Assembly: GCF_006345805.1 (NCBI RefSeq)
Contig: NC_043019.1
Coordinates: 9,609,360-9,673,359, forward strand
From: Octopus sinensis
Taxonomy: Eukaryota
Direction of reading: 5' to 3'
DNA length: 64,000 nt
The notes beneath the pieces were generated by a model. That model saw only the letters and a list, made by a program, of their open reading frames with translations, ran no database searches and was not told where the DNA came from. Of this stretch, positions 3,957 through 43,277 are shown piece after piece. Every line of letters begins with the position of its first letter. Position 1 is the first letter of the stretch. Both the position numbers and the translations under genes were made by a program.

Positions 3957-4000
<44 letters not shown>

Positions 4001-4001
<1 letters not shown>

Positions 4002-4140
4002 TTTATTTAAAGCAGCAGAAAATTCAACAAAACCTGTTATTCTGAGTTTCACGTTGCCGTTCGTCGGACAGCATATTACTCTACCACTGGTATTTGAGTA
4101 CTCTTTTTTCCACCTTGTTTCACATTTATATGTTTACTCC

Positions 4141-4143
<3 letters not shown>
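4001..4143. mobile_element. Mini Penelope-like pseudo-LTR fragment with 5' inversion, inserted in (TA)n
   Basis: Flanked by (TA)n on both sides. 4001-4071 and 4072-4143 are homologous to the two adjacent segments at 39363-39495 but in opposite relative orientation. Contains a hammerhead motif. Confidence 0.6.
4034..4071 (-). ncRNA. Minimal type I hammerhead ribozyme variant or relic
   Basis: Minus strand CTGT-CCGACGA-ACG(GCAA)CGT-GAAA-CTCAGA-ATA-ACAG. Stem I is CTGT/ACAG, stem II is 3 bp with a GNRA loop, and stem III is near-palindromic (ACTC-A-GAAT, one mismatch). Core U4 is C. Confidence 0.55.
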
Positions 4144-4201
<58 letters not shown>

Positions 4202-4228
4202 ATATATATATGTATGTATATATGTATA

Positions 4229-4443
4229 CGAGGAGTGCTGAAAAGTTCCTAGCTTTAAGGGTATCACGAAAGCCTTGTTGGAGGCCCAACCTTCTGAGTT
4301 CTTTTGTGGGTCTTAGAAAAATTGAAGGACTGCTGCCATAAGTGTGTGAATCTGTGACGGGAAGATGTTGAATAAAGTTATAATTAACTGATCCTCCTGT
4401 ATTTTCTTTTACCCTAAAATCAGGAACTTTTCAGTACCCACTG
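4229..4443. mobile_element. Mariner-type MITE
   Basis: Imperfect ~29-bp TIRs (cgaggagtgctgaaaagttcctagcttta / taaaatcaggaacttttcagtacccactg), flanked by TA at both ends. Confidence 0.7.
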
Positions 4444-4892
4444 TATGTGTATATATATATATCATCATCATCCTCATCATCATTGAATGTCCATTGTTCA
4501 TGCTGGCATGGTTTGCTTGGTTTGACCATGGCTGGCAAACTGGAAGGCAGCACCAAACTCCAGTTTGATTTGGCATAGTTGCTACAGCTGGATGCCCTTC
4601 CTACACACATGCACATAAACATGCAGTTTTAATTATTCATATCTATCAGTATACAAATAATTATACATAAATAAAACTATGAGTCAACAGTATATTTTTT
4701 TATGTTTTTTCTTTCCTTTTTTTTTATTGTGAGTCTATGCAAAAGTTGAATACCACTTCCTAATTCGGAACAGGTATATTTCTCAGTGAATCATATTTGC
4801 TGATAAAAAAGACATGAGAAAAAAATATGTCTTTATTGTTAAATGTAACAAAATGCTAATCATGAATAAAAGTGAATTTATTAATTAGCATA

Positions 4893-4962
4893 TATTTTCT
4901 ATTTTCCTTGCAGGTAAGTTTCAGAATGAATTTTGCAATATTTCAACAACAGACAGGTAGGA
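4893..4962 (+). promoter_or_regulatory. Candidate recursive splice site (ratchet point) with 43-nt RS-exon 4914-4956
   Basis: tattttctattttccttgCAG|GTAAGTtt: pyrimidine tract and acceptor directly abutting a consensus donor at 4913/4914. A second donor CAG|GTAGGA follows at 4956/4957. Branch-like ttaat at 4881 and ctaat near 4856. Confidence 0.65.
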
Positions 4963-5811: not shown

Positions 5812-8800
5812 TTTTGCTCCTGATCCTCACATTCCTTTTATTGTTGTTGGATATGTATTTATCAGTTGAAATACATAACTTTTGTAGGAAAATAATATGA
5901 TCCCCAAGAGATGCCTGACCAACCTGCCAGTGCTATCCATGCAATATACAAAGCTAATATGTACCCCCAGCCTGTGCTTTATGGTGTTTTGTGGATATGT
6001 TTTCTTTCATCTGTCACTACACCTTCAATACTGCCTTAGACAGGGGGTGAAAAATGCAAAGCCAAAGCAGCCTCACAACTATTTAGTAGGGATAATCCAT
6101 CTGCATGCTAAAGGGAAATACAGTTATCTATGCATATTCATGTTTTCAAGATATATCCAGCTGGATTATATATTTCTGAAAGTTGGATAATTTGCAGGAA
6201 CTAAAGAAAAACAGAAGTGGACACATTAATTTTGAGGTACTTGAGTCATGGCACTGTTTCCACTATTGTTATGCATCATGTTAGTCTGGATTTGTTTTGC
6301 TGACAGCAAAGAATTTCTGAACTTGCACCTATGACCAACTTGTTCTTTATAGGATTGAAAGATTTTGAGTTGTTCATTTTTGTTGTTGTAATACACACAC
6401 ACACACTCACACACATATGTGTGTGTGTATATGCATGTCTGTATTTGTATGTATGTACACATACTCAAACACAGGAAAATTCTTCAGCAAAGATTATAGA
6501 AACAAGAAATATGAGGAAATATTTAAATTTCAACAATTTAAATATAACTAAAGACACACACATAAAAAGATAAGCATACATATTCAAAATCACACACTCG
6601 TATACATACATGTGTGTGTGTGTAGTATCATGCTGTATATTACTGGTTATGGCATATAACTGGTCTGTTACCAACAATTTCATGCCAACTATTGCACTTG
6701 GAAATATCGATGAATCTGCAGACATTCTGGCTGGAAACACATTGCCTCTTTGATGCTGGAGGTATGCATAGTTCTGGTTGGCTCAATCTTGGGGGAAAGA
6801 ACTGGAGTGAAATGAAGGGAAAAGTTCTAACATTTTCCAAGAAAGATTTTCCCCACCTTTGTGTCAACCATGATGGTTGACACAACCAACATAACAGCTG
6901 TGTGTGTGTGTGTGGTTGTGCATGTACATGTCTATCATTCCTGCATCTGAAAATAGGGAGAACCATATAATCCTCTCAAATTTCCATTCACAAGGGCAGC
7001 ATTCAAATATTTTGTGTTTTGAATTCAAGACAGAATTTTGATTGTGTCCAATATTTTAGAATGGTTACTCTTTGCTAAGCAAGTCTTGCAACACCTACTT
7101 CCATTCAGATATACTCCAAGCTGTTGGACCATATTTTGCAGTGGACTACAAGCAAACAGTAACACTCAATGCCCCCAGCAAGACCATTGTTTAAATCAGT
7201 GAACACTCGTTTATATTAGTAACAGTTTTCTGTTATCAATATATCTTGATGAGATGGGTTAATACATCACATTTGAGTCAATTAAATGTCTATTATAATT
7301 GTGTAATCAAATAAACAATGATGTTGTATGCCATTGAAACAGATGTAGAGGTCACCTGGGCAAATTATGAATTGTATGTGAAATTCTTGCATTTCTTTTT
7401 TTATATCCTATATAAAGGCAGTGCTCCAGCATGACCACAGTCAAGTGACTGAAACAAATAAAAGAATAAAAGAATGTGTACACACTCACAAAACACACAT
7501 GCAATGGGCTTCTTTCAGTATTTGTCTACCAAATTGACTCACATCTATAACCCAAGGTCATAAATGTAGAGGTACATAAAGGTGGTTATGGTAGAGGTGC
7601 ATAGGTGTGATGGCAGATATGAAAGGATGTTGAGAATGATAGTAGATATGTGAGATATGAAAATGGAGTATTGCAAAGGAAAGTGGTTACTAAGGGAACA
7701 GAAAAGAAGTCGTCTATGGAAATAGCATTGGAGAAGAAAGGATAATGAAAATAAGGGATGGAAGTGGTTCCAGTGGGGCTGGAGGTAACTGATTGCACAA
7801 AGAAAGTGGAGCAGAGTAATATGTGTTAATTCTGTCTTCAAGTGATTACAGTTGCTAATTAGTGCCAGATATAGAGTGTTGGGTGAATGAAATGTGGCAA
7901 ATGTTCATGGGGCAGATTGAGTTACAAGCATAAACAGAATGCTTTTCGAATATCATTTTTTTACAATGATGGACAGGGTTTCTGAAGCACATTGAATCGC
8001 CAATCATCTCAGTTCCTTGTCATCTCCTCCATGGCTCAGATCTTGAAATCAGCCTTCCCTACTTTATTCCTGTACAAAAAAACACACACACACACACTCA
8101 TATATGATCATCACCACACACATATATATGTATGAAACGTATGTTTGTATGTATATATGTGTGTGTTTGTGTGTGTGTATGTAAATGTTTACCTATATAT
8201 TTTTAATTATCATTGTTTTAAAGTCTACTTTTCTGTTTGCATGGGTCAGATGGAATTTTTTTGAAGCTATAATACAAGTCACTTGTACAAGGTGCCATGC
8301 AGTGAGACTGACCCAGAGATAACATAGCTGGAAAGCAAGTTTTGTAACTATAGAGTTGCATCTGTGTGTGTGTGTATGTGTGTGTATGTGTGTGTGCACG
8401 CATATCATTATTATCGTTTAACATCTGTCTTCCATGCTGCTGTGGGTTAGACATTTTGGCAGGAGCTGGCAAACCAGAAGACTGCACCAAGCCCTACTAT
8501 CAGCTTTGACATGGTTTCTACATTTAGATGCCCATCCTAACACCAACCATTTTACAGGGTGTACTGGGTACTTTTTATGTAGCACCAGCATGATAAGATA
8601 ACCAGGGAAGTTGCAAGACAGAGATTCCCCAACTGAGAGGGGTTATTGGTATTGAGGGAGCATTTGTGCCAGGGGATGAGTTAAACTATTGCAGAGAGAG
8701 AGAAACAAGTGTCTTGCTGTAGAGGAGATACATGGTCACCCCAGTTGGAGGGAGGGAGGGAGAGAGAGAGAGAGAGAGATGGTGATGATATGTTAGGGCA

Positions 8801-9554: not shown

Positions 9555-9705
9555 GGAGTGGTTGGCATCAGGAAGGGCATCCAGTTGTAGAAACCATGTC
9601 AAATCAGACTGTAGTCTGGTGCAGCCTTCCAGCTTGCCAGCCCTGGTCAAGCCGTCCAACCCATGCCAGCATCGACAGCAGACACTAAATGATGATGATG
9701 ATGAT
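9555..9705 (+). mobile_element. Representative of an abundant RTE-tail-like repeat ending in (ATG)n
   Basis: tggttggcatcaggaagggcatccag...aacccatgccagcat...ttaaatgatgatg. About 20 related copies on both strands, e.g. 4470, 8420, 12430, 13480, 18170, 23460, 23970, 41520, 46530, 50720, 61683. Confidence 0.8.
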
Positions 9706-10091: not shown

Positions 10092-11289
10092 ATATATATA
10101 TATGCATAAATGTATATGCAGAGATAGATAGACAGACGGACAGGCAGATGATGTATTTATATATAAAACCCATCTTATCTCTCAGTCCTCCCCTATCTTA
10201 TTAATTTCCAACACCAGTTCCTGTCTTTCTTATCCCTTCCTCTCACAATTTGCAAGATGCCCTCGTTAGTTCTTGTGCCACAAAGAACACATTCGGTATA
10301 TTCTATTGGCTGATTGCATTAGGAAGAGAAGTTATCTATGGAAATGGTACTGAAGCAGGCATTGGAGCATGATGTAGTCCTCTGACATGTTGGATCCTGT
10401 TAAACAGTTTAATTTAAGCAATCATTAGAGGCAGACGTTATATGTTGATAATGATGAAGACAGCAGTGGCATGCACCTATAGATGAACATGGAGATTTGC
10501 TTAGATACTGCCTAGTTTTACTTATCTAGTTTTCTTCCCAACACTTAATTTCTATTTTATGTGTCTTCAATAGGATTCTAAAGATATAATACTCAGAGCA
10601 TTTTTCAACAAAGGGCGTGCATTTGTGTAACAATACTGTGTCATCACCATTTATTGATTGCATCAACTATAAACAGCACTTATTCAGAAGAATGTGTAAG
10701 TTCTGCCATTGCTTGATGACAGAACAGTTATGAGATCTGTGCCTATAGCCGACTCGTTACACCACATGACAAGTCTTATTCTTGTTAGCTTGTTAGGTGT
10801 TATAACATGAGCTGATCAGCTAACTGGGGCTTGACATAATATCAACAGAATTACTGACAGGCTGTGCTTTTGTCTTTGATAGTCTTAGCGTGAGAGTAAT
10901 TAACTGTGCACTTATAAGCTACTCCATACAACTTAACTCTTTCATTCACATTATATAATTTCCTGTGTGATGGTTGGCATCAAATTTCATAATTTCAATT
11001 GCATTAGACATCATGTCTTTCCTATCAGTCAAACATCAAAATTAAAAATAAATTATAATGCTGGCCTTTGATTCAAAAAAATCAATTAAAGTTTCAAAAA
11101 TATAATTTTAGCGTCAAGTGAGGGGCATTGTAAAGTTTTGGGCAGCATGGTGTCTTAAGGTTGAGAAGTTTCTTTCACTTGACTTTGAGTGTAAATACAG
11201 CAAGAAGCTGTAATTTTGAGGTTTACTACTTAACTTGTTGAATCTCTCTTACTTGCTCCTGTGACCCAGCATGGTTTCTATTCAAGAAG

Positions 11290-12310
11290 AAGCTGCCTTA
11301 CACAGCTTTTGCTTATATGGGGATATGATATATCTTGACTTTGCAAAAGCTTTTGATAAGGTCAATCATGGGATGATATGTTACAGGCTACAGAGGCTTG
11401 GTATAGTTAGAAAACTGAGAATGGTTACATGACTTCTTAAAAGACAGAAGCCAGGCTGTGCCAGCCAGTGGAGCCCCGTCCAAGCAGACAGTAACAGAGT
11501 GGAGTGCCTCAAAGATCTTTCTTGGGGGCCTCTGTTGTTTATGGTGGCTCTTTCAGATATGCCATCATTTGCACAGACAACCACACTTACTAGCTATGCT
11601 GATGACGCAGGTAGTACAAGCAGTCAAGGAAACGTCTGATGCTGATCTTCTACAGAAAGAATGAGATGCCATATATAGATGGGCTGAAGAAAACAACATG
11701 CAAATAAATGCATGGAAATTCCAAGCCCTCTTGGATCAAAATCTATAGCAAGCCAGAGTCATGTACTGTACATGACTCTGGGAATTGATGTGAGCAACCA
11801 TGCCTCGTTTCATGTACACATCACCTAGATGGTGGCAATGTGTATGTGAATGACTGGATGGATTCTGAGGACTTTCGGAACAAGGGACCAAGAAACCATG
11901 CCAATTATATGGAGGACATCATACTCAGCTGTTTGGACTACTGCTCTCAACTGTGGTCACCCAACAGTGTCAAAGTGAAAGCAGAACTTGAGGCAGTTCA
12001 GTGGTGCTGCACCAGGAGGATTGCATCAATAGAGCTACAACTCTACTCCCCGGAGCAAAGACGGGAGAGATATGCAGTGATATCTATATGGAAGATCCTG
12101 GAGGGGTTGGCACCAAACTTTGGCATTGAGAGCTATACCAGCCTCTGAACTGGACGTTGCTGTACTGTCCCAAAGATCCCGGCTGTCCCATCTAGTGTGA
12201 GGACCATGTATTGCAGCAGTTTGGAATTCAAAGGCCCACAGTTACTTAAGGTTTTGCTGAAATATCTGAGAGCTCTTCATGGAGTAGGAGTAGATGTAGA
12301 GTATAGGTCT
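11290..12310 (+). pseudogene. Decayed CR1-clade LINE ORF2 (RT and C-terminal region)
   Basis: YLDFAKAFDKVNHG at 11331, SGVPQ near 11498, SYADD near 11592, then LDYCSQLWSP and EQRRERYAVISIWKILEGLAPNFGI. Frameshifted. Confidence 0.85.
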
Positions 12311-12959
12311 CTCATAAATATGGAACAATTTGACCTCAGATATTATCCCATAAACCGGCCTCCTCCAATAAAATATATATGTATACATACATATGTATAG
12401 CACCCATGCAATGCTACATAAAAGCACCCAGCATATTCTGAAAAGTGGTTGGTGTTAGGAATGGCAACCAGCTATAGAAATCGGAGTGGAGTCTAGTGCA
12501 GCTTCCCAGCTTGCAAGCTCTGGTCAAACTGCCCAACTCATGCCAGCATGGACAATAGACGTTAAATGATGATTATGATGATGATAATATATACATACAT
12601 ATATACATATATACACACACACATATATATGGTACTTATTCTATTGGCCCCTTTTGCCAAACCACCAAGTTATGGGTACATAAACACACCAGCACCAGTT
12701 GTCAAGCTGCAGAGGGAGCCAAATACAGACATAAACATACACGTGTGTGTGTGTGTGTGTGTGTGTATGAATGCATGCTTGTATGTATGTATGTATGTAT
12801 ATATATATATATATATATATAATTGTAGTGGCGGTTTTTTTGACTATTTATTAAAATTTTATGTATTGATTAAGTCTTTCCTTGTTTGTTTTGCAAAATA
12901 GTGGTTTTGTCTCTAATAATATTTTATATATATATATATACATATACACACACACATAT

Positions 12960-13416: not shown

Positions 13417-15939
13417 TACTCACACATACACGTACACACACACACACACATACACACACACATATATATATATATAATTTTAATGTCCATTCTCTATGCT
13501 AGCATATGTTGGATGGTTTGATAGAAGGTGGCCAGCTGGAGAGATGCCCAAGTTCCAGTCGTCTGTTTTGGCATGGTTTCTGCAGCTGGATGTCCTTCCT
13601 AACACTGACCACTTTACAGAATGAACTGGATGCCTTTTACATGGCACCAGCATGGCTGCTTTAACATGGTTTCTGAAGTTGTATGCCATTCTTAATGCCT
13701 ACCACTTTACAGAGTGCACTGTAATATATGTAATATATGTATATTGTTTCCTTACTGCTTATTGTAGCTAACATTGCCAGTACATGATACCTGTTTAGTT
13801 ATTTAAAGCTAGTTGGCCTATGCTGGTGAAGTTTAAGCTTGTATATTAGAAACACGATGATATGTAATGCAGTGCAGATATCAGAATATAAACTGTTGAA
13901 CTCTGCAATTCAATAACCCTTATTGATTCAACAGACTTAAAAACTATCAGGTTATTGCAAGGAGTGTAAATCATATATCTCAGTTAATCATGTTCAAACT
14001 CAACATGTCTAAACTAAGACCATACAGTGTGTGTGTGTGTGTGTGGTGTGTGTGTGTGTGTGTGTGTTATTTTATAATTATTTAAGCTGAGAGGATGGAA
14101 CAAAGTTAAAGTGAAAGAGTGGCTATAAACTGAGGGAAAAAGAAGAGATAAACTAAAGAGAGATAAAATAAACAGGAGAAAAAAAGATCAAAGGAACCGA
14201 GCAAATAATGTTGGAGAGTGAGGGGGGATCGAAAGAAATGACAAAACATAGCATTTAAAGATATCATTAATTAATAATCTATACACTATGCAGATATTGG
14301 ATAGCTGAATGTATATATTTGACTAGCTATTTGTTGATATGCAGTTTGATTCCACTACAAGCTTTCTTTGTGTTTCTGAGCAGATCATCTGTCTATCAGA
14401 AGTTGGCACTACATCATCTAACGAATGGTATCTTTTGTAGACTGTCCAAGAGGAAATTTATCTTTTATCCACTTCCTACCATAAAACTGGACCTAAGTAT
14501 TAATACTTAAAAACTCAAGTGGGAAATATTTGCATTTTACTATACACAAGAAGTAGGTGCTCTGTACTGTGTGAAGGTGGTTAAACAGCCAGCAAAAATG
14601 GGGAAAGATATCAAGCTGGTTTCAAATCCAGGTTGAAGAAAATTTATTCACACATACATGTATGCACGCATACACACATGCACGCACACGCACACACACA
14701 CACACACACACAACACACACACACACACACACACACATACACACACACACACACACCAGCTCCAGGTTAAAATGCTAGATTACACTTTTGTCCTTTTGGT
14801 AGGAAGCTGAATCTTATTGCTGCCTTTAGATACATAGCTGTTGCCTTCATTTCACCTAAGATTATAAAACAGATTCTACAACCTCCTACTTCACATTTGG
14901 TTGGTTAAGTAGTAAGATGAATCATCATTTGGCAATTGATTCATTCAAAAAACCATCTCCTGTTTGCAAGTATAGAAAAAAAAACAACACCATAAAATCA
15001 TTTTTTTAAAATAGATAGAGTGAGAAATTGATAATGTGTACGTGTCACTGATACCAAGATACCTTACCCTCTGGTAGCTCTGTCTCCTTAACTCGGTATT
15101 GATACCACATTATATAGAGAAGTCATTGCTGTAAGCAACAGCTGTTGATCTATGATAGTGATTTTTTTTATATAAGCATAAGGGGATTGGATGCTGTCAT
15201 TCATATCAAGACCTGTATTTGACTGATACTTATTTCTACCCGAAAAGGATACGAGGTGAAACTGAATTCATTTGCATTTAACTTTGGAAGGTGAAAAATT
15301 CTAACTAAAAACCAAAAGATATTTGTTCAACATTCTAATTAATGATTCTACCACTCAACTACCGCTCAGACTGTTAATACTGAGGTTTATTATCTTGCAC
15401 ATTGGTAAGTTCTAATTATAGACCAGAGGTTTTCAGTCTAGATCTGATTACTGAAGTCCAGTTCATCACACTGGTGTCCACCACTCATTGGATATTCTCT
15501 AGCTAAGATCAACTGTATGACAGTCACATGTGTGCATCTGCCTATAAAAATATACTGATAGACAGACACAGAAGTATACACTCGGTTGCCATACAGAATA
15601 CAATTGATCACACTATTTGACACATAAGTGGTTAATAACTTTTTCTCTTTAAAGATCTCAAAAAATTGAACAAAATATTGTGTTGTTGGGTGAAGTGTAT
15701 GCATGTACATTTGGCTATGAGCATTGATAATGATAATGGGAATGAGAAGGATTTTCAGTGACTATAACAAATGCAAAAATAACAACAATGACCACAATTG
15801 GAATGAGGATAGCTATAATGATAATTATGATAACAGTATCGCATATGATGATGATGACATTGACAATTGAGCATACAGGGTGGAATAACAATGTTTTAGC
15901 TGATACACAATCTATCTTTTTTCATTATTCGTGGCACTC

Positions 15940-17414: not shown

Positions 17415-20400
17415 TGTATGTGTGTGTGTGTGTGTGTGCGCATGCGTGCACAAGTATGCATATGTATAAAGGTATTTCAAATATAATACAAGATAAATTT
17501 TTGATTTATTAAAATATCTTCCTGTTGTGTGAAAGATATGTAAAAGCTTTGTGGTTATTTTGATCAATTCCAATTAAGAAGAGGTATAATCTGAGGAATT
17601 AAGAGCTTTCAAAAATTACACCAGTAAGGTAAAAACAGACTGATTATTTGAGACAAGAGGACACCTTTTGATATGTTTCTACCTCAGCTGGTTTCATTAG
17701 CACAGCAGTTGTTTGATTTGTGTCCATCAGGAAAGATATTCAGGCACATGCAAAATGAGCTGAAAATATTTATGGATTACAAGTAATTCGCAAAATTTAG
17801 ATCAAAATGGACACAGGGAAATGACTGGGAGGTCATTGGCATACATATAAGCAATAAAGATGAACTCCCATTGTGAGGAATGGGTGTTCGAAGTATAGCT
17901 ATTTCCAAACTCCGCTGATTATTATTTATTCAATATATAAAGCTATATCAAATACCATACAGACAAATTCTTTTTAACCCTAGCAGCTTGATATTCTATG
18001 CAGTTAATTTGGGAAAGAAACTGGGTACATCTACTCTTAGGAATGGTCAACAAACCCTGAAATGGTCTATCAGAAGACACTCCACCTCTTTACTTCATTA
18101 ATCGCATTGGAAAACTGTGTTTATATTCTTAGTATTTCTGTCACAGGCTTTCTAATCATTATCATCCACATCGTCATCTAACCTCCGCTTTCCATGTTGG
18201 CATGGGTTGGACGGTTTGAAAGGAACTGGCTAGGCAGAAGACTACATCATGCTTACTGTCTGTTTTGGTACGGGTTTTACAGCTGGATTCCCTTCCAAAT
18301 GCCAACCACTTTACAATGTGGACTGTTGGCTTTTTATGTGACACCAGCACTGGCAAGGTCATCAAGTAACTTGCAAGACAAAAATCCTTTGAGAGGAGCG
18401 GGGGCTTGGAGGAGGTGGTCTTGTACCAGATGATGGAAGGTTAGAGTGTAACAGAGGGACAGAAACAACTGTCTTACCATAGAGGAAATACATGCTTACC
18501 TGGTGAAAGAGAGAGAGAGAGTGATCAAGACTGAGGCCAGTAACAGGTGTGTTGCTGTAGAGAAGATACATGGTTAACCAGTCAGAGGGATAGAGCAAGA
18601 GGAAGAGAGAGAGTGCAAGAGAAAGAGAGTGAGTGGAAGAGAGCATTCTTGTGAAGTCTCTACGCCCTATTCATGCACCTTGGCAATACCCTACCATTCA
18701 TATTCTGACCCCATATCTTGAGGGCATGTCCTTCCACTTTGCCAGTACTTACCTCTCCCTTGCTTTTCCTTAACATCCCATTTATATTCTGATCACCATT
18801 CATTGTGAGCATGCCCTGGCACTTTGCCACCATCTCTCTCCTGCTCTCTTGCTTTCTAATATTTAAATTTATTTCTATCCTTCTGATTTGTACTCTATTA
18901 TACATGAATTATATACATTGTAATTAATAACAAGCTGTCAAAAGCACAAATATGCAAATTAAACCATCCAGCACACTGTGAGCCTAATTTATGACTGTTA
19001 TATTACAGCTGAATATCTTGTGCTATATATTATGGCATGAAATTGGATGCGTTCTCTGAGGAGCACTCAAAGCTCAACAAACAGTGATACTGTCTATCAG
19101 GAGATTCCACAAGTCATTTTTCTGAGTATCAAAAGCTTACAAAAATATATATTTACATTATAAATGTTTCGCTCACAGCCATATTATCTAATATTTAAAT
19201 TAATTTCAATCCTTTTGATTCATGTTGTGCTGTGCATCAAACATATTGATAGACAAACAGACAACACCACTACTGGTTCTTCTAAATGTGAGTAGCTATG
19301 TGACTCCTCAACAACAAGTCTGCTCTGCACCATATCCTTCTCTAATACTTTATCCTCCATCTCCTAACATAAAGTAATAGTGATAACCACACTATTATTA
19401 GTGGCACTTTCCGTAAAGTGGTTAAGATTGGAAAGTGCAGCCAGCCATAGAAATCATGCCAAAGCAGACACTGGAGCACAGTGCAGTCCTCGGATCCATC
19501 AGATCCTGTCAAACTATGCAACCCATTCCAGCATGGAATATGGACATTAAATCTTCAGCTTGAAGTCGAAGATTTTAAACTAGCAGAGACAACTCTAGAA
19601 TATTACCTGAGGAAACACAAGATCTCATTATGCAAACAAACAGTTGCCTAATCAAATACCTGCATTTCTGGAGAACCATGTTGGGTGGAAAAATTGTAGT
19701 GATTTAAAAAATAACTGTCCAAATGTACTCCTCCTTGTTGACTCCACTTTCTTCAATATATATATATATGTGTGTATGTGTGTGTGAATGAGTGTACATC
19801 TGTAACAGCTCAGATGAATTTCCATGCATGTGTTTCAAGTTTTGTACCTTCAATGTCATTGGTTTATAATTTAACACCCCACCCAGGCCAGCAACACCAT
19901 TGCCACAGTCACAATTATTTTGCATGCTTACTGCTAACACCAACACCACAGTCATCGATACTTCTCCCTGGTGCTACCTTTTGCTGTTTCCAAACTTCAG
20001 GCACATGTTTCATAGCTACTGCTACCACCACCACCCTCAGTATCCATACTTTCAGCAGTTCCCCTCTTTATTATGACCATTGACAGCTTCTCCGCCATAC
20101 AAACACTAAACCCCCTTCATGACTTTATACATTACCATTATTGATATCATCAATGCCCACTTATACCACTTCTGGCACAATCACTAGCACCAACATCACC
20201 ACCCATTTGGGGTGCCCTTATATATATAATCCACACTACTGGTTTCCCTCAACCTATCCAGCCTTACCCGTTTCGTTTCTCCCCACCGCAAAGTAACTCT
20301 CTATATATGTTTTTCTACCTAGACTTTCTATATTATTAGTCTCATTAGATATTATAATTAGTGCCTGAGATGCCCACTTGCAAAACAGATCATACTTTGT

Positions 20401-22634: not shown

Positions 22635-23141
22635 TATATATGTATTCCTCTGAATATATGGAGCAACAAATTAGTTCCTGAAGAGCTGAGTGGGGTTGTG
22701 ATATTGAGTGAGGAGTCTTTATGGCAAATGTTGAGAAGCTAAGGTGTGACAGAGGAATAGAAACAGGTGTCTCACCGTAGAAGAAATACATAGCAACCCC
22801 AGCAAGGAAGGTTAGTGGAGATGAGTTGTTAGGGCCTATTTTCAAGGTGAAGAAAGTGGATAAAAAGAAAATAAGGGCAAAGTATCAAGGATGGGAGTAT
22901 GGGTAAGTTTGTGGGGAGGGAAAAGAAGAGTGACAGACAGTTAGAGATGATGATTGAGGTGAATGTAGGGAATAGTGAATACAAGTAAAGGTGTGGTCAT
23001 TGGTAAATGTCAGTTTTGGGGGGAGTAAAACAGTGGGTGAGGGAGGAGGTGATAGGTGACAGTACATATTATAAAAGGTGGGGGGAGTAACAGTATAATA
23101 AAACTGTAGATAGATGAGAAATGAGATGTTGTGAAGTATGG

Positions 23142-23185
<44 letters not shown>

Positions 23186-24244
23186 GGCACAAGGACAGAG
23201 ATGGCAGTCAAAGGAACACAGGGATAATAAATATATTGAGAAACAAAGTTAGGATGGCAGATGTGAGAGGGTGATCAGAGGAAAGAGGTATTTTGTGGAA
23301 AATAAAGAGATAAGGGATGATGTTGAGGATGGGGGGCAGGTTAAAGACAGAGCGATCCTAATCTTGCAGGCTTGCAGGTGCTGGTGTCGCATAAAAAGCA
23401 CCTGTGCTGGTGCCCCAGAAGAGCACCGATGCTGGTGCTACTTGAAAGAACACAGTACAGTTTGTAAAGTGGTTGGCACTAGGAAGGACATCAAGCCATA
23501 GAAAACCATGCCTAGGTAGACATGGGGCCTGAGCGGCTCTTCAGCTGACCAGCTCCTGTCAGACTGTCCAACCCACACCAGTATTGGAAATGAACATTAA
23601 ATGATGATGATGATGACAAATATATATGTATGTTCTCTTCCTTTCTTCCTCTCCGTCTCTCCCTCTTCCTCTCTCTAGTTGGGTAACCATGTACTTCTTC
23701 TACAGCAAGACATCTGTTTCTTTCTCTCTGTCACACCCTAACCCTTCATCATCTGATACAAGATCATCCCCTTCAATGTTCCCTCCCCTCCCAAAGATTC
23801 TTTGTCTTGCAAAGTTACTTGGTGACCCTGCCAGTGCAGGTACCACTTAAAAAAAACACCCAGTCCATACAGTAAGGTAGCTGGCATTTGGAAGGGCATC
23901 CAGTGGTAAATACGATGACCTTAACTGTTTGAGTGGCATGTAAAAAGTACTCAACCCATTCTGCAGAGCAGTTGGTGTTAGGAAGGGCATCCAGCTGTAG
24001 AAACCCTGCCAAAACAGACACTGAAGCATTGTGCTGGCTCCTGCCTGGCCAGCTCCTGTCAAACCGTCCACTCCATGGCAGCATGGAAGAAGGATATTAA
24101 ATGATGATGATGTATGTATGTGCACAACTATTATATATCTTATACATATATATATATATACACACACACGCATATACGTACGTTATATATATATATATAT
24201 ATACATACATAAATATACACACACACATATACACAACACACATG

Positions 24245-25190: not shown

Positions 25191-25419
25191 ATATGTATAT
25201 ATGTATATGCACACATATGTATACATGTTATATATAATGCTGACATTATGAGAATTTCATAAACTTTTAAGAGAACATGGTAAAATAACACTTGTTTGGA
25301 ATAGATTTTGAAGCAGACAAAAAAACAATACAAATTTACATGCCGTTATTTATAGCTTTATGTGTGCTTCAAGATCCATTATTCCAAAGCAGAGTTTATA
25401 TAGCATATATAGATATATA

Positions 25420-25574
25420 TAGACACACACACACACATACATACACACATGCATACATACATACATGCATACATATATATGCACACTCCTATATCTACAT
25501 GTTTATATATATATATACATATATATATATACATATATATACACACATCTATATATATACATACATATACATAT

Positions 25575-25618
<44 letters not shown>

Positions 25619-25752
25619 ATATTTCGGAATGGTCATATTTAAACGTACTATATATATATATATATACATAACACATGCTAGCATGGAAAGCGGACGTTAA
25701 ATGATGATGATGATGATGCATATATACATACATATATATATATATACATGCA

Positions 25753-25784
<32 letters not shown>

Positions 25785-25882
25785 CACATATATATATATA
25801 TACACATATATATACACATATATATATATACATATATATACATATATGCATACATACATATATATACATATATATATACATA

Positions 25883-25918
<36 letters not shown>

Positions 25919-25920
25919 AT
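25420..25920. repeat. Compound (TA)n/(CATA)n microsatellite, left flank of the PLE
   Basis: Read directly from sequence. Confidence 0.9.
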
Positions 25921-26069
25921 GTGAAATAGAAAGATGAATAATCTTGTAGTAGATTAATCAAAAGTTTAACCGATACCTTAGTAGCAAAAATCACCGCAGT
26001 AAACAGCACGGTTGGAGGTACAACCATATGGTGTTGCAACCGTGCGTTGGTGCGGATAATTGAAATTAA

Positions 26070-26663
26070 AACATTATTGGTGAATTGAAGAAATGGAGCT
26101 GAACGCAGATTGAACAGAAATCGTTTTATTTCATTCTACACGTGTTTCGAAAGGCACAAATTACCAAAATCCGATTGAATAATGGGACCATATTGTGTCT
26201 TTCTCTTCAGGAAGAAAATAGGAAATCCGTTGGAAACAGAACAGAGGCGGAGCAAAAACAAATCGAACTATGCTCCTAAGAGCCCATGGCGAAACTGTTT
26301 ATCAGTGTATGTTGAGAACCGGTGGCTGAAGAATTTAACGGGTCAGGCATCGGTCAATCATGTGGGTGAGGGTGTGTGGGTGTTCTTTGTGACCGAGAAT
26401 AAAGTTCTGACTATTTAAAGAATATTGGATGTTTTATAAGGGGCGAGAAAAAATCTACTTAGAGACGTGTGTGTGTGTGTATACTGTTCTATATATGTGT
26501 GTGTTGGCGTAGGGGTAGAAAACATTTTTTGTGTACGTGTGTGCGTTTGATCGTTCGGCTGTCAGTGGCTACTGCCGCGAGAACCGTTGGGTGGCAGAAA
26601 AAAATATATATATTATGTTTTATGTGTGTGTGTGTTCATCTAAGCCTGCCTTGTCAAGGAAAC
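26070..26663 (-). repeat. Left arm of inverted repeat (sense 3' pseudo-LTR)
   Basis: Reverse complement of 27210-27801. Differences found by eye: two substitutions, one A-run indel, one GT-unit indel and a 1-bp indel at the inner end. Confidence 0.95.
26127..26220 (-). ncRNA. Type I hammerhead ribozyme (left pseudo-LTR)
   Basis: Exact reverse complement of 27651-27744. Confidence 0.85.
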
Positions 26664-26797: not shown

Positions 26798-27250
26798 CTA
26801 TTTAAAAGCCAGATAAGTGTAACGCCGCCAATGGGGGCATCGAAAAGCCGACTGTAAAAGCCCGTTTACCATCCGGCCTCTGGCAAACAAAATATGGAAG
26901 AGTTCGGAGACACAAAGGTTGCACTGCCTTCTGCCCCTATCAAATGGGAGGGCCACCGACAAAATTGACCATTCCAGCCTGTAGCTTAAGTTCGTATCCT
27001 TCAGTCGCCATATTAGCTTACTGAGTCCCGTGGTCTGGCGCTTGTTCATGTCCCGAAAAGTTGCGTAATGGTTGGAGACACGCAAAAACAATCTTGAGGA
27101 TGAGGCCCCTACATAAGTGAAGACATCTGAGTCCGTGTAAACCTTGCATTGGTAGACGGCGTTTTTGATCTTGGAGTTCGCCGACGTGAATCTTATTCTG
27201 CTAGGATTAGTTTCTTGACAAGGCAGGCTTAGATGAACACACACACACAT
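26798..27250 (-). CDS. Penelope-type GIY-YIG endonuclease domain (150 aa from in-frame ATG; no RT)
   Basis: NAVYQCKV..TYVGAS (GIY-YIG motif), RVSNH (catalytic Arg), LSKLIWRLKD, CNLCVSE (catalytic Glu), MVN (Asn) and CPH. No stops. The ATG at 27250 is supplied by the inverted arm, so expression is unproven. Confidence 0.75.
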   Translation of the reverse strand: MCVCVHLSLPCQETNPSRIRFTSANSKIKNAVYQCKVYTDSDVFTYVGASSSRLFLRVSNHYATFRDMNKRQTTGLSKLIWRLKDTNLSYRLEWSILSVALPFDRGRRQCNLCVSELFHILFARGRMVNGLLQSAFRCPHWRRYTYLAFK

Positions 27251-27432
27251 AAAACATAATATATATATTTTTTTTCTGCCACCCAACGGTTCTCGCGGCA
27301 GTAGCCACTGACAGCCGAACGATCAAACGCACACACGTACACAAAAAATGTTTTGTACCCCTACGCCAACACACACATATATAGAACAGTATACACACAC
27401 ACACGTCTCTAAGTAGATTTTTTCTCGCCCCT

Positions 27433-27466
27433 TATAAAACATCCAATATTCCTTAAATAGTCAGAA
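27433..27466 (+). promoter_or_regulatory. Candidate TATA box plus initiator in the pseudo-LTR (mirror copy 26432-26438 on minus)
   Basis: TATAAAA at 27433-27439 and Inr-like TCAG with its A at 27463, 30 nt downstream. AATAAA at 27741-27746, just after the ribozyme cleavage site. Confidence 0.45.
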
Positions 27467-27650
27467 CTTTATTCTCGGTCACAAAGAACACCCACACACC
27501 CTCACCCACATGATTGACCGATGCCTGACCCGTTAAATTCTTCAGCCACCGGTTCTCAACATACACTGATAAACAGTTTCGCCATGGGCTCTTAGGAGCA
27601 TAGTTCGATTTGTTTTTGCTCCGCCTCTGTTCTGTTTCCAACGGATTTCC

Positions 27651-27744
27651 TATTTTCTTCCTGAAGAGAAAGACACAATATGGTCCCATTATTCAATCGG
27701 ATTTTGGTAATTTGTGCCTTTCGAAACACGTGTAGAATGAAATA
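27651..27744 (+). ncRNA. Type I hammerhead ribozyme (right pseudo-LTR)
   Basis: Stem I tattttcttc/gaatgaaata; core CTGAAGA 27661-27667; stem II GAAAGACACAA/TTGTGCCTTTC (10 of 11 bp); GAAA 27723-27726; palindromic stem III ACACGTGT; GUA triplet with predicted cleavage after 27734. Confidence 0.85.
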
Positions 27745-27799
27745 AAACGATTTCTGTTCAATCTGCGTTCAGCTCCATTTCTTCAATTCACCAATAATG

Positions 27800-27841
<42 letters not shown>

Positions 27842-37707: not shown

Positions 37708-38630
37708 TTGGGTCATCCCATATATAATGTGGTTTTATCAATTGCATGAACTAAAAGTCGGACGGGAATGGGACAAACTACCTGCATCAACTTGCTATAA
37801 AAGCAGGTAGTAATTTTATCTTGACCTTATTCTTAGTGCCAATTTTGAAGAGTGCAGTTCGATTTTAACAGTTATTTTTTCAACGCTATAATGGAAGTGA
37901 CAAAGGAGTTCAGTAAAGGCAACAATGCAATAGAAAGTGCAAGGAATATTAATGCAGTATATGGGTATTGGACAGTAAGTGTAAGTCAGTGTTAATGGTG
38001 GTTCCAGAAATTCTGAGCCAGAAACTACAGCCTAGATGATGTGCCTTGTCCTGGAAGATCTTTAGGTCTTGACAAGGATGTCCTGCAAACCCTGGTGGAA
38101 CAAAATCCCATCCCAACTGTTGAGGAACTAGCAGAGAAGCTTGGATTCAGTCATTCATCGACACCTGCATGTCATCCAGAAAGCTTAATCACACGCAGAG
38201 AGTGAATGCGTGCTCTTCTTTGCTGTCACATCTCACAAATGAACCTTTTTTTGGACCAAATAGTGACTGGAGACAAGAAATAAATTCTCTATAATAATGT
38301 CAAGTGCCAAAGGCAGTGGATAGAGAAAGGAGAAGCACCAGCACCCCAGGCTAAAGGTCTTCACCCATGTAAGGTGATGTATTTTGTTTGGTGGGATATG
38401 GAAGGTTCAGTCCACTTCGAACTTTTAAACCCAAACCAAACGATGATGAAGGAGATCTAATGTGAGCAGCTTGAGGGGCTTCAACCAGTGCCAGAAGAGA
38501 AACAACCATCTTTGGTTTCAAGACAAAAGATGTTCTTCCATCAAGATAATATTTGGCCAGGATAACACTCCAAAAGCTGGAGCAGTTTGAATGGAAAATG
38601 ATGCCCCACCCACCATATTCGTCAGACATT
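37708..38630 (+). mobile_element. Decayed mariner transposon with left TIR
   Basis: TA-ttgggtcatccca TIR and ATG at 37891. Peptides WWFQKF, LDDVPCPGR, LDQIVTGDKK*ILYNN, LHPCKVMLFVWWDMEG, FHQDN and HPPYSSD. Confidence 0.85.
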
Positions 38631-39366: not shown

Positions 39367-39905
39367 AGAGTAAGCGCAAATATGAAACAAGGGGGGAAAA
39401 ACTATTACTCAAGGTAGAATAATGCTTTATTATTCAAGCTGCAAAAACATCGCAAGAAATCACAAAAGAGTTTCATGTTTCTGTTCATTAGACAGTTTTG
39501 ATTGAGAATAGAACAAAATTAAGATTAGTAGCAGTTTTTTGTGATTTTTTGTGATGTTTTTGCAACTTTAATAACAAAGCTTATATAGTAATATATGTGT
39601 AAAAAGGTTGAATTAGATTCGGCCTTTAATTTGGAGGTTTCCATAAAAAGATTTCTAATATACATTCTTCATATTTCGCTGGTAGCTTACTGGCTTAAGC
39701 CTGCAAAAATGAAAATAATACTTGTATATGGTGTGTTGTGAATTAAGGGAAAGGAATCTCATACAACTCAACACTTTTGTTAAAAATGGAGAAGAGATGT
39801 TAAAATATAAGAGAATTTTAATTTAAATTTTAAAATTCTCTTATATTCTAACATCTCTTCTCCCTTTTTAAAAAATTAATGAGTTGTATGGGATTCACAA
39901 CACAC
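39363..39905 (-). mobile_element. Decayed Penelope-like 3' fragment with hammerhead relic and foldback inversions
   Basis: (TA)n-abutting tail homologous to 4072-4143. Hammerhead relic at 39468-39495 (CTGT-CTAATGA-ACA GAAA CAT-GAAAC). Inverted repeat 39424-39467 / 39537-39580, and a hairpin spanning 39731-39905. Confidence 0.6.
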
Positions 39906-39940
39906 AATATCTATCTATCTATCTATCTGTCTATCTATCT

Positions 39941-40165
39941 AGAACCCCCTGTACGGATAAGTACTGTACTGTATGTAGATTTAGCCCACAAACAAACTGT
40001 AAAGCCAGAAATGTAGTCTATAGTATAAGATGTATAGAGGGACGATGCAGTAACAAGACAATGACATACATAGGGGAAACGGCAAGAAGCATAGGAGAGC
40101 GGGTAAATGAACATTGGAGAGAACTCAAGGAAGGTAAAAGCTCATCGATTCTGAACAGGAACATG
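39941..40165 (+). pseudogene. Second Penelope-type GIY-YIG fragment (Cys-containing type)
   Basis: CTDKYCTVC...NCKARNVVYSIRCIEGRC..TYIGETARSIGERVNEH. It begins right after (TATC)n and is truncated. Confidence 0.8.
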
Positions 40166-43100
40166 GGGGATCAATATTACTAAATAATGATGATTATGTC
40201 AGTATATATAAATGTGTACATGAGTAAATATATATGAACTTGAATATATATCATCATTACCATTATCATCTTTTTTTCATACTTGCATGGGATGTATGTG
40301 TTATAGTTTGAATCCACACACATTCAGAAGTGACATTTAAGTTTCAACTCCCATGTTAATTTTATTAAACTCCCACCATCGCTTGTACACTCAGGTCATC
40401 CACATACAAAGAGCACAACAATAATAAGAGGAAAGAACATGGCCACTGACTTGGTAGTAGTCCTTTATTTTAACTGTTACATATGTTTCAGTATTCAGCA
40501 ATGCATGGCATCACACTTTAAATGTAACCAGCAGATGCACCCTACAGGACCAGCATGGTGAGCAAACACATCATCAAGCAGTTAAAGAGAAGATACAAGT
40601 ATGAAACTAGCAGCAACAAAATTTAAATACATTGTGGGTGGATGGGTTACATACACACACACACACACACTCACACACACACACACAGCAGAGATTGCAC
40701 CCCATTATCTTGCCAGCATGCAATCTTTCTGCTTACCCTTGCCCTTTCATAGTTCAAGTATAAGTAACTTAAGCCCCCATTCTACGCCCAGTGACTAACC
40801 CCCTACCCTTACAAACACCAGTCCATTCTATGGTTATGTTAGTCAGTTTCTCAATGTACCTCTTCTGTCTCCCCCCCCCCCTTCTGGCTGGTATCCCCTG
40901 TGGGTTTAAATTTCATTGCTGTTGTTGGCACATTTTACTTCCCCACTTTCTTTGCACCACCTGTTTCTCTTCCCCATTATCTTCCCTTCCCCACCCATGC
41001 TTTTTCATGGATCACTGCTTTTCTCTACTTTCAGTTATGTACCTTAAATCTCCTTCCCTTCCACTCCTTCTCTTCGCACTTCAGCTCCCACTACCTTCTG
41101 AGCCATCCTTCCTCAGCTATTTCCATTTCTCACATTACCCTATCTTCATAGATATTTCCCACCAAACATACTGCTTCTACCCCATCTCTAATCATGTTAC
41201 TCTCCTCTCACCCACTTATAAAAGTACCCTCTCTCTCTTCCCCTCCTCTGACCCACTGTCTGTGTTCTCTTTTAGTTCACTTTCCTGTACCTTGAGAGTT
41301 TGCTCTGACACTACACCACTTTCATCTTTATCCCCTCCCAACTCCTCCCACACACATATTCCCTCTGTAACAAGACACCTAGACTTGTCTCTCTATCATA
41401 ATTTAACTTCAGCATAAAGCCATCTCTTTCACTTAGTAGTAGGAGATTTTTTTCCATAGTTACTCGGCAACTTTGCTAGTGCCAGTGACACAAGAAAAAG
41501 AGGTACCCAGTGCACACTGTAATGTGGATGACATTGGAAGGGTATTCAACCAAGAAACCATGCCAAATCTAACACTGGAGCTTGGCATTGCTCTGTGACT
41601 CACTGAAACCAGTCCAACTGTCCAATTCATCCAAGCATGGAAAATGGACATTAAATGATGATGACGACGACGATGACGACAATGACGATGATGATGATGA
41701 TGATTTTGTATGTATGTGTGTGTGTGTATGTGTGTGTGTGTGTAGTATCCTCTGTCTTGAAATGTCGTGATACCACCATGATATTGTGACGGATGGTTTA
41801 GATACACTCTAACAGTAAACAAGATAACACAGCTGTAATAACAACGATCTAACAATCTCTTCACAAACCAACAATCAATATTCCAAATGAACAAACCAAC
41901 CAACACCTTCCAACCTCACTGTGAACTCAACTCGAACTAACACACAAACTTCACTCCAATCACTACTATTTGTAATCGCTTGGTCCAGTCTATTTCTTGC
42001 AAGGGGGTATCAAGACTCTCACCACAACGGTGTGTATGTGTGTGTGTGTGTACATATGTATGCAATTTAAACTTGTCTGTTGGAAAATTGGTGACCAGAT
42101 AAAGCAAAATATTGTTTAATACACTTGCTTCTACTATTAGAAATATTATAAAATTTATTGTAAGTTACTTCATAGGTAGAAGAATACTGTTGTTCTTAGC
42201 TAGCCCCTATATTATGCATAAAAAGAATGGGATTGATTGTGAGTGATATCTATCCCACCTATACTTATAGTATTTGATTCATTGTTCTCTCATATTTTTG
42301 CATAAATGTATACATTTTCAAAGCTACAGAGTTAACACAACCTTCCTATCAAGAGTTCCCTAAAATAATTCCAAGATAGGCAATGGGAGCCATATTCACA
42401 GCAAAATAGAAACCAAAGCAGATATCACACATCTAGAAACCTAGTGATAAATTAAGAAAAATTACTGACTATTGTAAGTCACATAGAGTTAACACGAAAA
42501 TTCTTCTTGACTCTGTGATGATGTTCCATTGATAAATGACATTATTGCCATGGTTCTCTACCAACTACCATTTACACCCACAATTTTGAGTGAAGAGCTC
42601 TAGAAATATGGATAGATCTCTATAAACACAGAAGGTAACATTGTACACATTGAACTGTGACTATGCCAGGGTACTTTATTTGAGGGTTTTACTCACTCAT
42701 TTTGCACAAATACTTTGTTTAGTACTTATTGATTAAGGGAAAAAGAGGGAAGTCAACCTGGACATAAATTAACAAAATCAAGATATTTTTGCTCAACCCT
42801 TTTTATGTCATCCTCCATCAGTATATGCCTGTGGTCATGTCATCATCCTCATTGTTCTCAAAGTTTATTGAGGCAGATTTTCTGTGACTGGATGCCCTTC
42901 CTGTTGCCCACCCTTCCCTACTGCCAAGCAAAGTAATATTTCCCCATGGCAAGACATGCTTTCACTGAACATTGAAAATGAATGACAATGTTTGTATGAC
43001 AGCGACACTTATTTACAACTATCACACAATAAAAAGTGGTTGGTATTAGGAATAGCATCCAGCCATAAAAACCATACTACAGCAGACATTGGGTTCCAAT

Positions 43101-43277
43101 GCAACCCTCTAACTCATTGGATCCTATTGAACTGACCAACTCATGCTAGCATGGAAAATGGTGATTACATGATGACGATGTGTGTGTGTGTGTGTGCATG
43201 TAGGCATATATGTGCATGTTTGTGTATGTATATAACATGAATATATATAAACATATCTCTCTATGTATGTTTGTGTG

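What the first reader, a model, noticed from the sequence alone, without database searches (positions are those of the whole stretch)
4893..4962. Recursive splice site 1 with a 43-nt RS-exon
Seen: a long pyrimidine tract with CAG directly joined to GTAAGT, in non-repetitive sequence, and a second donor 43 nt downstream. Known: this acceptor-donor fusion followed by a short cryptic exon is the ratchet-point architecture of long introns in Drosophila and vertebrates. Inference: recursive splicing in a cephalopod long intron, which I am not aware has been characterised in this lineage. Inclusion of 43 nt would shift the frame if the site lies within a CDS.
Basis: partly seen in the sequence, partly recalled or inferred. 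Interest (0 to 1): 0.8.

Follow-up and report, generated by a model that had tools for sequence, protein, structure and literature searches.

The report
Two predicted recursive splice sites
The reported acceptor-donor fusion is real and far from chance, and a second site 53.6 kb downstream on the same strand has the same layout, so this looks like stepwise ("recursive") removal of a very long intron; no RNA or cross-species evidence could be obtained.

Summary
A pyrimidine-rich tract (4893-4909) is followed by CAG (4911-4913), fused to GTAAGT (4914-4919). A second donor, CAG|GTAGGA, has its GT at 4957, which gives a 43-nt RS-exon (4914-4956).

A second site on the + strand has the same layout. 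A 23-nt pure pyrimidine run ends in CAG (58470-58472), fused to GTAAGT (58473-58478). Its second donor, CAG|GTAAGA, has its GT at 58515, giving a 42-nt RS-exon.

These are the only two CAGGTAAGT on the + strand; the - strand has none. They are also the only two top-scoring donors on the + strand. Both have TT at -6/-5, a yUnAy branch-point candidate near -30, and a downstream donor weaker than the fused one. They are single-copy in the window and are not copies of each other. In 300 dinucleotide shuffles, none gave two fusions and none gave a fusion with a downstream donor.

This is the ratchet-point plus cryptic RS-exon layout described in Drosophila and vertebrates. I could not test + strand transcription, intron context, conservation or cephalopod origin. 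The held literature has no paper on recursive splicing in molluscs. My verdict is a well-supported sequence-level prediction of a known mechanism in a possibly new lineage.

The parts
4881..4885 (+). Candidate branch-point sequence TTAAT for site 1, with the branch A at 4884 (-30). A second candidate, TTTAT, has its A at -34.
   Evidence: yUnAy scan. The position matches the -30 peak of recursive lariat branch points in Drosophila (10.1101/006163). Inferred, not shown.
4893..4909 (+). Pyrimidine-rich tract of site 1 (16/20 Y at -23..-4; TT at -6/-5).
4911..4919 (+). Ratchet-point core of site 1: CAG|GTAAGT, with the junction between 4913 and 4914.
   Evidence: Donor PWM score 12.8 bits, the maximum seen in the window.
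4914..4956 (+). Predicted cryptic RS-exon 1, 43 nt. Two frames are open and TAA stops the third. Its length shifts the reading frame.
4957..4962 (+). RS-exon 1 donor, (CAG|)GTAGGA. It scores 9.5 bits, weaker than the ratchet-point donor.
58442..58446 (+). Candidate branch-point sequence TTTAT for site 2, with the A at 58445 (-28). An alternative, TTAAT, has its A at 58432 (-41).
   Evidence: Inferred.
58448..58470 (+). Polypyrimidine tract of site 2: a 23-nt uninterrupted Y run, 20/20 Y at -23..-4, TT at -6/-5. No other AG lies in the 60 nt upstream.
58470..58478 (+). Ratchet-point core of site 2: CAG|GTAAGT, with the junction between 58472 and 58473.
   Evidence: 12.8 bits.
58473..58514 (+). 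Predicted RS-exon 2, 42 nt. It preserves the frame; two frames are open and TAA stops the third.
58515..58520 (+). RS-exon 2 donor, (CAG|)GTAAGA, 11.3 bits.

Best explanation
Positions 4913|4914 and 58472|58473 are recursive splice sites (ratchet points) on the + strand, inside one very long intron or two long introns of a + strand gene.

Proposed mechanism, inferred from the known pathway:
1. As the intron is transcribed, U2AF and U2 recognise the branch point (about -30), the pyrimidine tract and the CAG. U1 bound at the donor 42-43 nt downstream defines a short cryptic RS-exon.
2. The upstream exon is spliced to the RS-exon. This removes the first intron segment as a lariat and places the upstream exon directly in front of GTAAGT, which regenerates a strong 5' splice site.
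3. That regenerated donor outcompetes the weaker RS-exon donor. The RS-exon is therefore removed together with the next intron segment and leaves no trace in the mRNA.

What is shown: the motifs, their strengths, their spacing and their non-randomness. What is inferred: transcription of the + strand, the intron context, and actual use of the sites.
For: (1) The motif is exact at both sites: Y-tract, CAG|GTAAGT, then CAG|GTRRGA 43 and 42 nt downstream.

(2) These are the only two CAGGTAAGT on the + strand and there are none on the - strand. They are also the only two donors of at least 12 bits on the + strand.

(3) Non-randomness. Shuffles gave a mean of 0.023 fusions per window and none with a downstream donor. 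From the window's own densities (36 strong acceptors, about 3e-4 donors of at least 9 bits per base), about 0.01 coincidences are expected and 2 are seen. Each site then also has a donor of at least 9 bits in a 56-nt span, with a chance of about 0.02 each.

(4) Published background for such motifs on the non-transcribed strand of long introns is 0.07-0.12 per 100 kb in 12 of the 13 animals tabulated (0 in mosquito). In fly long introns the sense-strand figure is 2.2 per 100 kb (PMC2773006). Here it is 3.1 per 100 kb on the + strand.

(5) Finer features match Drosophila ratchet points. TT at -6/-5 is seen in 99.5% of fly ratchet points and the branch-point peak is at -30. A short cryptic RS-exon of about 50 nt with its own donor is typical (PMC8605326), and most fly sites have a 5'ss less than 100 nt downstream (PMC6224609). 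The ratchet-point donor is stronger than the RS-exon donor: 12.8 against 9.5 and 11.3 bits.

(6) The two sites share no homology beyond the motif and are single-copy in the window, so they are not two copies of a repeat.

(7) The spacing of 53,559 nt lies within the range of fly recursive segments, 2.6-63.6 kb.
Against: There is no direct evidence that the + strand is transcribed or that the sites lie in an intron. I found no convincing exon on either strand. Strand-asymmetry proxies were uninformative: AATAAA 53 on + against 67 on -, and SINE-like copies 9 on + against 7 on -.

Conservation could not be tested. The splice-site PWM is a generic human-like one, not trained on this species. The donor score uses the genomic CAG at -3..-1, whereas the real regenerated donor would carry the unknown upstream exon's last three bases.

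The site 1 pyrimidine tract is interrupted and an AG lies at -27; it would have to be bypassed, being only 3 nt from the -30 branch candidate. The 53.6 kb spacing is near the top of the fly range. RS-exon 2 is 42 nt and open in two frames, so it could be an ordinary included exon.

Thresholds and distance windows for the statistics were chosen after seeing the sites, so the very small probabilities are only orders of magnitude.
Confidence: 0.7

Rival explanations
1. The two sites are ordinary expressed micro-exons (cassette or constitutive, 43 and 42 nt) of a + strand gene that happen to begin with GTAAGT. These would be 'annotated-type' RS-exons that are mostly included in the mRNA, not silent ratchet points. 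Recursion would then be a side reaction or a way of regulating skipping.
For: Both have a strong acceptor and a strong downstream donor, and each is open in two of three frames. Exon 2 is 42 nt and preserves the frame. In deuterostomes, hundreds of annotated exons begin with a 5'ss-like sequence and are kept in by the exon junction complex (PMC6224609).
Against: A perfect GTAAGT at the first six exon bases has a chance of about 3e-4 per site from base composition, and it occurs at both. The fused donor is stronger than the exon donor, which favours skipping. Exon 1 is 43 nt, has low GC (0.30) and shifts the frame. Neither translation looks like protein.
Confidence: 0.12
2. Chance or non-functional sequence. 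The window is not transcribed on the + strand, or the motifs are never used, and the resemblance to ratchet points is coincidental.
For: No exon, transcript or conservation evidence could be obtained. AT-rich, microsatellite-rich DNA produces pyrimidine tracts readily: 36 strong acceptor-like sites on the real + strand against 8.7 in shuffles. One lookalike exists on the - strand at 18499.
Against: Two full matches on one strand have a joint expectation well below 1e-4 from the window's own motif densities. Published background on non-transcribed strands is about 0.1 per 100 kb. The - strand lookalike lies at the edge of a repeat copy next to a (CT)n run and has only a weaker donor 22 nt downstream. 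The two + strand sites are unique sequence.
Confidence: 0.12
3. The sites are U1-binding or decoy elements that act without recursion. For example, strong intronic 5'ss motifs might recruit U1 to suppress premature cleavage and polyadenylation in a long intron, or the pairs might act as decoy or poison exons that trigger transcript decay when included.
For: Each site carries two strong U1-complementary motifs within 45 nt. Exon 1 would shift the frame, and both exons carry TAA in one frame.
Against: U1 recruitment alone does not explain why a strong branch-point, pyrimidine-tract and CAG acceptor is fused exactly to the first donor at both sites, nor the TT at -6/-5.
Confidence: 0.04

Closest known systems
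Drosophila intronic ratchet points with cryptic RS-exons (Burnette 2005; Duff 2015; Joseph 2018; Joseph and Lai 2021, PMC8605326)
   Same: A juxtaposed strong 3'ss and 5'ss around AG|GT with consensus (Y)n-CAG|GTAAGT. TT at -6/-5 and a branch-point candidate near -30. A short cryptic exon (about 50 nt in fly; 43 and 42 nt here) ending in its own, weaker donor. RS-exon 1 is out of frame. Density is about 3 per 100 kb against 2.2 per 100 kb in fly long introns. Segment length lies within the fly range.
   Different: Here the sites are only predicted from sequence, with no junction, lariat, sawtooth or conservation data. The 53.6 kb segment is about three times the fly mean of 18 kb. RS-exon 2 preserves the frame.
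Vertebrate recursive splicing through RS-exons in long neuronal genes (Sibley 2015, as summarised in PMC6224609)
   Same: An RS-exon defined by a downstream 5'ss. Efficient recursion needs the regenerated RS-5'ss to outcompete the RS-exon 5'ss, and that is the order of strengths seen here. The sites lie in very long introns.
   Different: Only about 10 efficient intronic sites are reported for human, and vertebrate long introns show little sense-strand enrichment of the motif (ratio 1.5 or less). Two sites in 64 kb is a fly-like density, not a vertebrate-like one.
Computationally predicted RP-site enrichment in long introns of non-model invertebrates (sea urchin, mosquito, bee, beetle; Shepard 2009, PMC2773006)
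   Same: The same kind of evidence: the motif on one strand far above its frequency on the complementary strand.
   Different: That study covered no mollusc or other lophotrochozoan, and it did not consider the downstream RS-exon donor. Here only one 64 kb window is available, not a genome-wide count.

Membership tests
Recursive splice site / ratchet point with cryptic RS-exon | A 3' splice site and a 5' splice site juxtaposed around a central AG|GT | tested here: met
   CAG|GTAAGT at 4911-4919 and 58470-58478. Both combine a strong acceptor with the top-scoring donor in the window.
Recursive splice site / ratchet point with cryptic RS-exon | A prominent pyrimidine tract with TT at -6/-5, and a branch point about 30 nt upstream (Drosophila ratchet points) | tested here: met
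   16/20 and 20/20 pyrimidines. TT at -6/-5 at both sites. yUnAy candidates at -30/-34 and -28/-41. Criteria from 10.1101/006163. The branch point itself is only predicted.
Recursive splice site / ratchet point with cryptic RS-exon | A 5' splice site less than 100 nt downstream that defines a short RS-exon | tested here: met
   Donors at +43 (9.5 bits) and +42 (11.3 bits). Criteria from PMC8605326 and PMC6224609.
Recursive splice site / ratchet point with cryptic RS-exon | The regenerated ratchet-point donor is stronger than the RS-exon donor, so the RS-exon is skipped | tested here: inconclusive
   12.8 against 9.5 and 11.3 bits with a generic PWM. The true -3..-1 bases of the regenerated donor come from the unknown upstream exon.
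Recursive splice site / ratchet point with cryptic RS-exon | Location on the sense strand inside a long intron | not testable with these tools
   No annotation or transcripts were available and no exon was recognised in the window. Strand is inferred only from both motifs lying on the + strand.
Recursive splice site / ratchet point with cryptic RS-exon | Splicing intermediates: junction reads from the upstream exon to the site, lariats from the site, and sawtooth nascent-RNA coverage | not testable with these tools
   No RNA-seq access.
Recursive splice site / ratchet point with cryptic RS-exon | The core is conserved above its flanks in related species | not testable with these tools
   Four attempts to reach orthologous DNA failed. 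Exact look-up of 10 ORFs found none in the collection. A homology search with the open frame spanning site 2 found nothing. Two exact-pattern scans of metagenome contigs found nothing.

The most novel reading that the evidence does not exclude
Recursive splicing through cryptic RS-exons would then be documented in all three bilaterian super-clades and would probably be ancestral. Cephalopods, with their very long introns, would use it the way flies do and not the way vertebrates do.
Probability: 0.5. Interest if true: 0.6.

Novelty: new member of a known kind. Interest (0 to 1): 0.5.

Why it matters
Recursive splicing has been shown experimentally in flies (about 200 or more intronic sites) and in vertebrates (about 10 efficient intronic sites, plus many annotated RS-exons). 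Motif enrichment has been predicted in a few other invertebrates. The held literature has nothing for molluscs.

Animals with very long introns in neural genes must solve the same problem of splicing across tens of kilobases. Confirmed ratchet points in a third bilaterian super-clade would bear on two questions: whether the cryptic RS-exon pathway is ancestral, and whether the fly pattern (many silent ratchet points) or the vertebrate pattern (few) is the derived one.

In practical terms, such sites are points where a single base change in GTAAGT would force in a frame-shifting 43-nt exon, so they matter for gene annotation and for interpreting variants. The claim can be tested directly with existing kinds of data: total RNA-seq and genome alignments.

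Tried and rejected
(1) Reaching orthologous loci through spurious ORFs next to the sites. An exact look-up of 10 window ORFs found none in the collection. A homology search with the 164-codon open frame spanning site 2 found no hit.

(2) Identifying the organism or host gene through transposon proteins. The reverse-transcriptase tail 11789-12145 gave only distant hits of 49% identity or less, mostly unnamed metagenome proteins. The intact 162-aa ORF 26798-27286(-) gave nothing. The taxon is therefore unverified.

(3) Exact-pattern scans of metagenome contigs for both site cores gave 0 matches.

(4) Rfam and tRNA scans of the window found nothing.

(5) Exon hunting. I examined all stop-free stretches of at least 45 codons in six frames and all open acceptor-donor pairs. 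Apart from transposon fragments nothing looked protein-like, so I could name no host gene.

(6) Strand-of-transcription proxies were uninformative: AATAAA 53 against 67, poly-T against poly-A runs 39 against 25, SINE-like orientation 9 against 7.

(7) The idea that the two sites are copies of one repeat is rejected. They share only a 27-nt, 85% match across the motif itself.

(8) The - strand lookalike at 18499 is rejected as a ratchet point. It lies at a repeat edge next to (CT)n, and its only downstream donor is 22 nt away and weaker.

(9) A literature search for the SINE-like core as a text string found nothing useful.

Full report
**Observation.** The sequence at 4893-4962 reads TATTTTCTATTTTCCTTGCAG|GTAAGTTTCAGAATGAATTTTGCAATATTTCAACAACAGACAG|GTAGGA. 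The acceptor AG is at 4912-4913 and the fused donor GTAAGT at 4914-4919. The tract upstream has 16 of 20 pyrimidines at -23..-4 and is interrupted by three A's. The 600 nt around the site have no other copy in the window.

**A second site.** CAGGTAAGT occurs only twice on the + strand and never on the - strand. The second occurrence, at 58470-58478, has the same anatomy in a cleaner form. A 23-nt uninterrupted pyrimidine run ends in CAG. GTAAGT follows from 58473. A second donor, CAG|GTAAGA, has its GT at 58515, which gives a 42-nt interval (58473-58514). The two sites lie 53,559 nt apart. They share no similarity beyond the motif itself, only a 27-nt match at 85%, so they are not two copies of a repeat.

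**Is it more than chance?** I scored donors with a generic metazoan 5'ss weight matrix. I called an acceptor strong if it was YAG with at least 16/20 pyrimidines at -23..-4.
- The + strand holds 36 strong acceptors and 19 donors of at least 9 bits.
- Only two donors reach 12 bits. Both sit exactly on a strong acceptor, and each has another donor of at least 9 bits 42-43 nt downstream.
- In 300 dinucleotide-preserving shuffles the mean number of acceptor-donor fusions was 0.023. No shuffle had two, and none had a fusion with a donor 25-80 nt downstream.
- Shuffles under-represent pyrimidine tracts (8.7 strong acceptors against 36 in the real sequence), so the window's own densities are the fairer null. 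36 acceptors times about 3e-4 donors per base gives about 0.01 expected fusions, against 2 seen. The downstream donors add a factor of about 0.02 each.
- The thresholds were set after I had seen the sites, so these are orders of magnitude. The conclusion is still robust.
- An external yardstick agrees. Ratchet-point motifs occur at 0.07-0.12 per 100 kb on the non-transcribed strand of long introns in 12 of the 13 animals tabulated (0 in mosquito), and at 2.2 per 100 kb on the sense strand in Drosophila (PMC2773006). Here the + strand has 3.1 per 100 kb.

**The - strand control.** The only comparable motif on the - strand is CACCAG|GTAAGC at 18499. It lies at the edge of a repeated element, with other copies at 23682-23834, 22725-22791 and 8701-8776, and it abuts a (CT)n run that supplies its 'pyrimidine tract'. 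Its only downstream donor is 22 nt away and weaker. I treat it as a by-product of the repeat.

**Fine anatomy against the known system.** The comparison draws on four published descriptions:
- Drosophila ratchet points have an unusually prominent pyrimidine tract. They carry TT at -6/-5 in 99.5% of cases, against 44% of ordinary introns, and their lariat branch points peak at -30 (10.1101/006163).
- They are followed by a short cryptic RS-exon of about 50 nt with its own donor. That exon is poorly conserved, is usually out of frame, and must be recognised and then skipped (PMC8605326).
- Most fly sites have a 5'ss less than 100 nt downstream.
- In vertebrates, efficient recursion needs the regenerated donor to outcompete the RS-exon donor (PMC6224609).

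Both window sites have TT at -6/-5. They have yUnAy candidates at -30/-34 (site 1) and at -28/-41 (site 2). They have a donor at +43 or +42, and the fused donor is stronger than the RS-exon donor: 12.8 against 9.5 and 11.3 bits. At site 1 an AG lies at -27, only 3 nt from the -30 branch candidate. From general knowledge of 3'ss selection, an AG that close to the branch is normally bypassed. Both RS-exons carry TAA in one frame and are open in the other two. Exon 1 (43 nt) shifts the frame and exon 2 (42 nt) does not.

**Mechanism proposed.** The upstream exon is first spliced to the RS-exon, which is defined by its acceptor and its downstream donor. This puts the exon end in front of GTAAGT and recreates a strong 5'ss. 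That donor is then used in place of the RS-exon donor, so the RS-exon leaves with the next intron segment. The motifs and their relative strengths are shown. Their use is inferred.

**What could not be established.**
- No exon. I found no convincing exon on either strand among all open stretches and all open acceptor-donor pairs. The recognisable coding remnants are transposon pieces: mariner transposase at 38017-38457 (PF01359, E = 1.2e-16), a non-LTR reverse-transcriptase tail at 11265-12145, and a weak GIY-YIG match at 39884-40183. The intron context and + strand transcription therefore rest on the two motifs alone.
- No informative strand proxies.
- No related sequence. I could not reach sequence from related species or confirm the organism.

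**Comparison and novelty.** By every sequence-level criterion that I could test, the sites match ratchet points with cryptic RS-exons, and the density is fly-like. The three defining functional criteria (sense-strand intron location, splicing intermediates, conservation) are untested. In the held library no paper pairs recursive splicing with octopus. The three that pair it with cephalopod or mollusc are not about it: I read the cephalopod one (incidental, in the reference list) and judged the two mollusc ones from title and abstract only. The one multi-species motif survey covers insects, sea urchin and vertebrates only. If the taxon is right, this is a new member of a known kind: the same mechanism predicted in a lineage where it has not been described.

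**Verdict.** I put about 0.7 on functional recursive splice sites, about 0.12 on ordinary included micro-exons that begin with GTAAGT, about 0.12 on non-functional coincidence, and a few percent on U1 or decoy roles without recursion. Interest is moderate. A specialist would not be astonished, because the mechanism and its motif are well known and already predicted in several invertebrates. It remains a clean, directly testable prediction that would extend recursive splicing to a third bilaterian super-clade.

Noticed in passing
window 58448-58520 (+): A second recursive-splice-site candidate with the same layout as the reported one: a 23-nt pyrimidine run, CAG|GTAAGT at 58470-58478, and a 42-nt RS-exon ending in CAG|GTAAGA.
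   Followed up: yes
window 26067-26661 and 27211-27804: A large, near-perfect inverted repeat. The arms are about 595 nt and 98-99% complementary, in three gapless blocks, with a spacer of about 549 nt. A 162-aa ORF (26798-27286, - strand) in the spacer and right arm has no homologue and no Pfam match. It could be a foldback-type element, a long intronic hairpin or an assembly artefact.
   Followed up: partly
window 18478-18524 (-): A ratchet-point lookalike on the - strand, CACCAG|GTAAGC (donor G at 18499). It lies at the edge of a repeat copy next to a (CT)n run, and its only downstream donor is 22 nt away. I judged it a by-product of the repeat.
   Followed up: yes
window 4474-4608, 8393-8577, 9561-9700, 12420-12629, 13459-13647, 18169-18306, 19433-19552, 23472-23612, 23901-24180, 41536-41664, 43039-43190, 46536-46708, 50724-50866, 61689-61829 and others: A SINE-like interspersed repeat family with a core of about 140-190 bp and 67-78% identity between copies. 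There are at least 16 copies in 64 kb, in both orientations (9 on + and 7 on -), often followed by TA/TG/CA-type microsatellites. One copy ends about 300 nt upstream of site 1.
   Followed up: partly
window 38017-38457 (+): Frame-broken mariner-type transposase remnant (Pfam PF01359 Transposase_1, E = 1.2e-16, for the piece at 38284-38457).
   Followed up: partly
window 11265-12145 (+): Frame-broken tail of a non-LTR retrotransposon reverse transcriptase. The only homologues found are distant (49% identity or less), almost all unnamed ENA metagenome proteins, plus one hypothetical protein from the crab Chionoecetes opilio.
   Followed up: partly
window 62000-64000, also 2558-2971, 3958-4341, 25292-26039: Extensive AT-rich compound microsatellite fields of TA/TG/CA type, which read as YIYIYI... 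in translation. GC falls to 0.18 in the last 2 kb of the window.
   Followed up: no
window 39884-40183 (+): A 99-aa ORF with a weak GIY-YIG nuclease match (PF01541, 20.4 bits, below the 22.6-bit cut-off). It may be a Penelope-like or other GIY-YIG element remnant.
   Followed up: no
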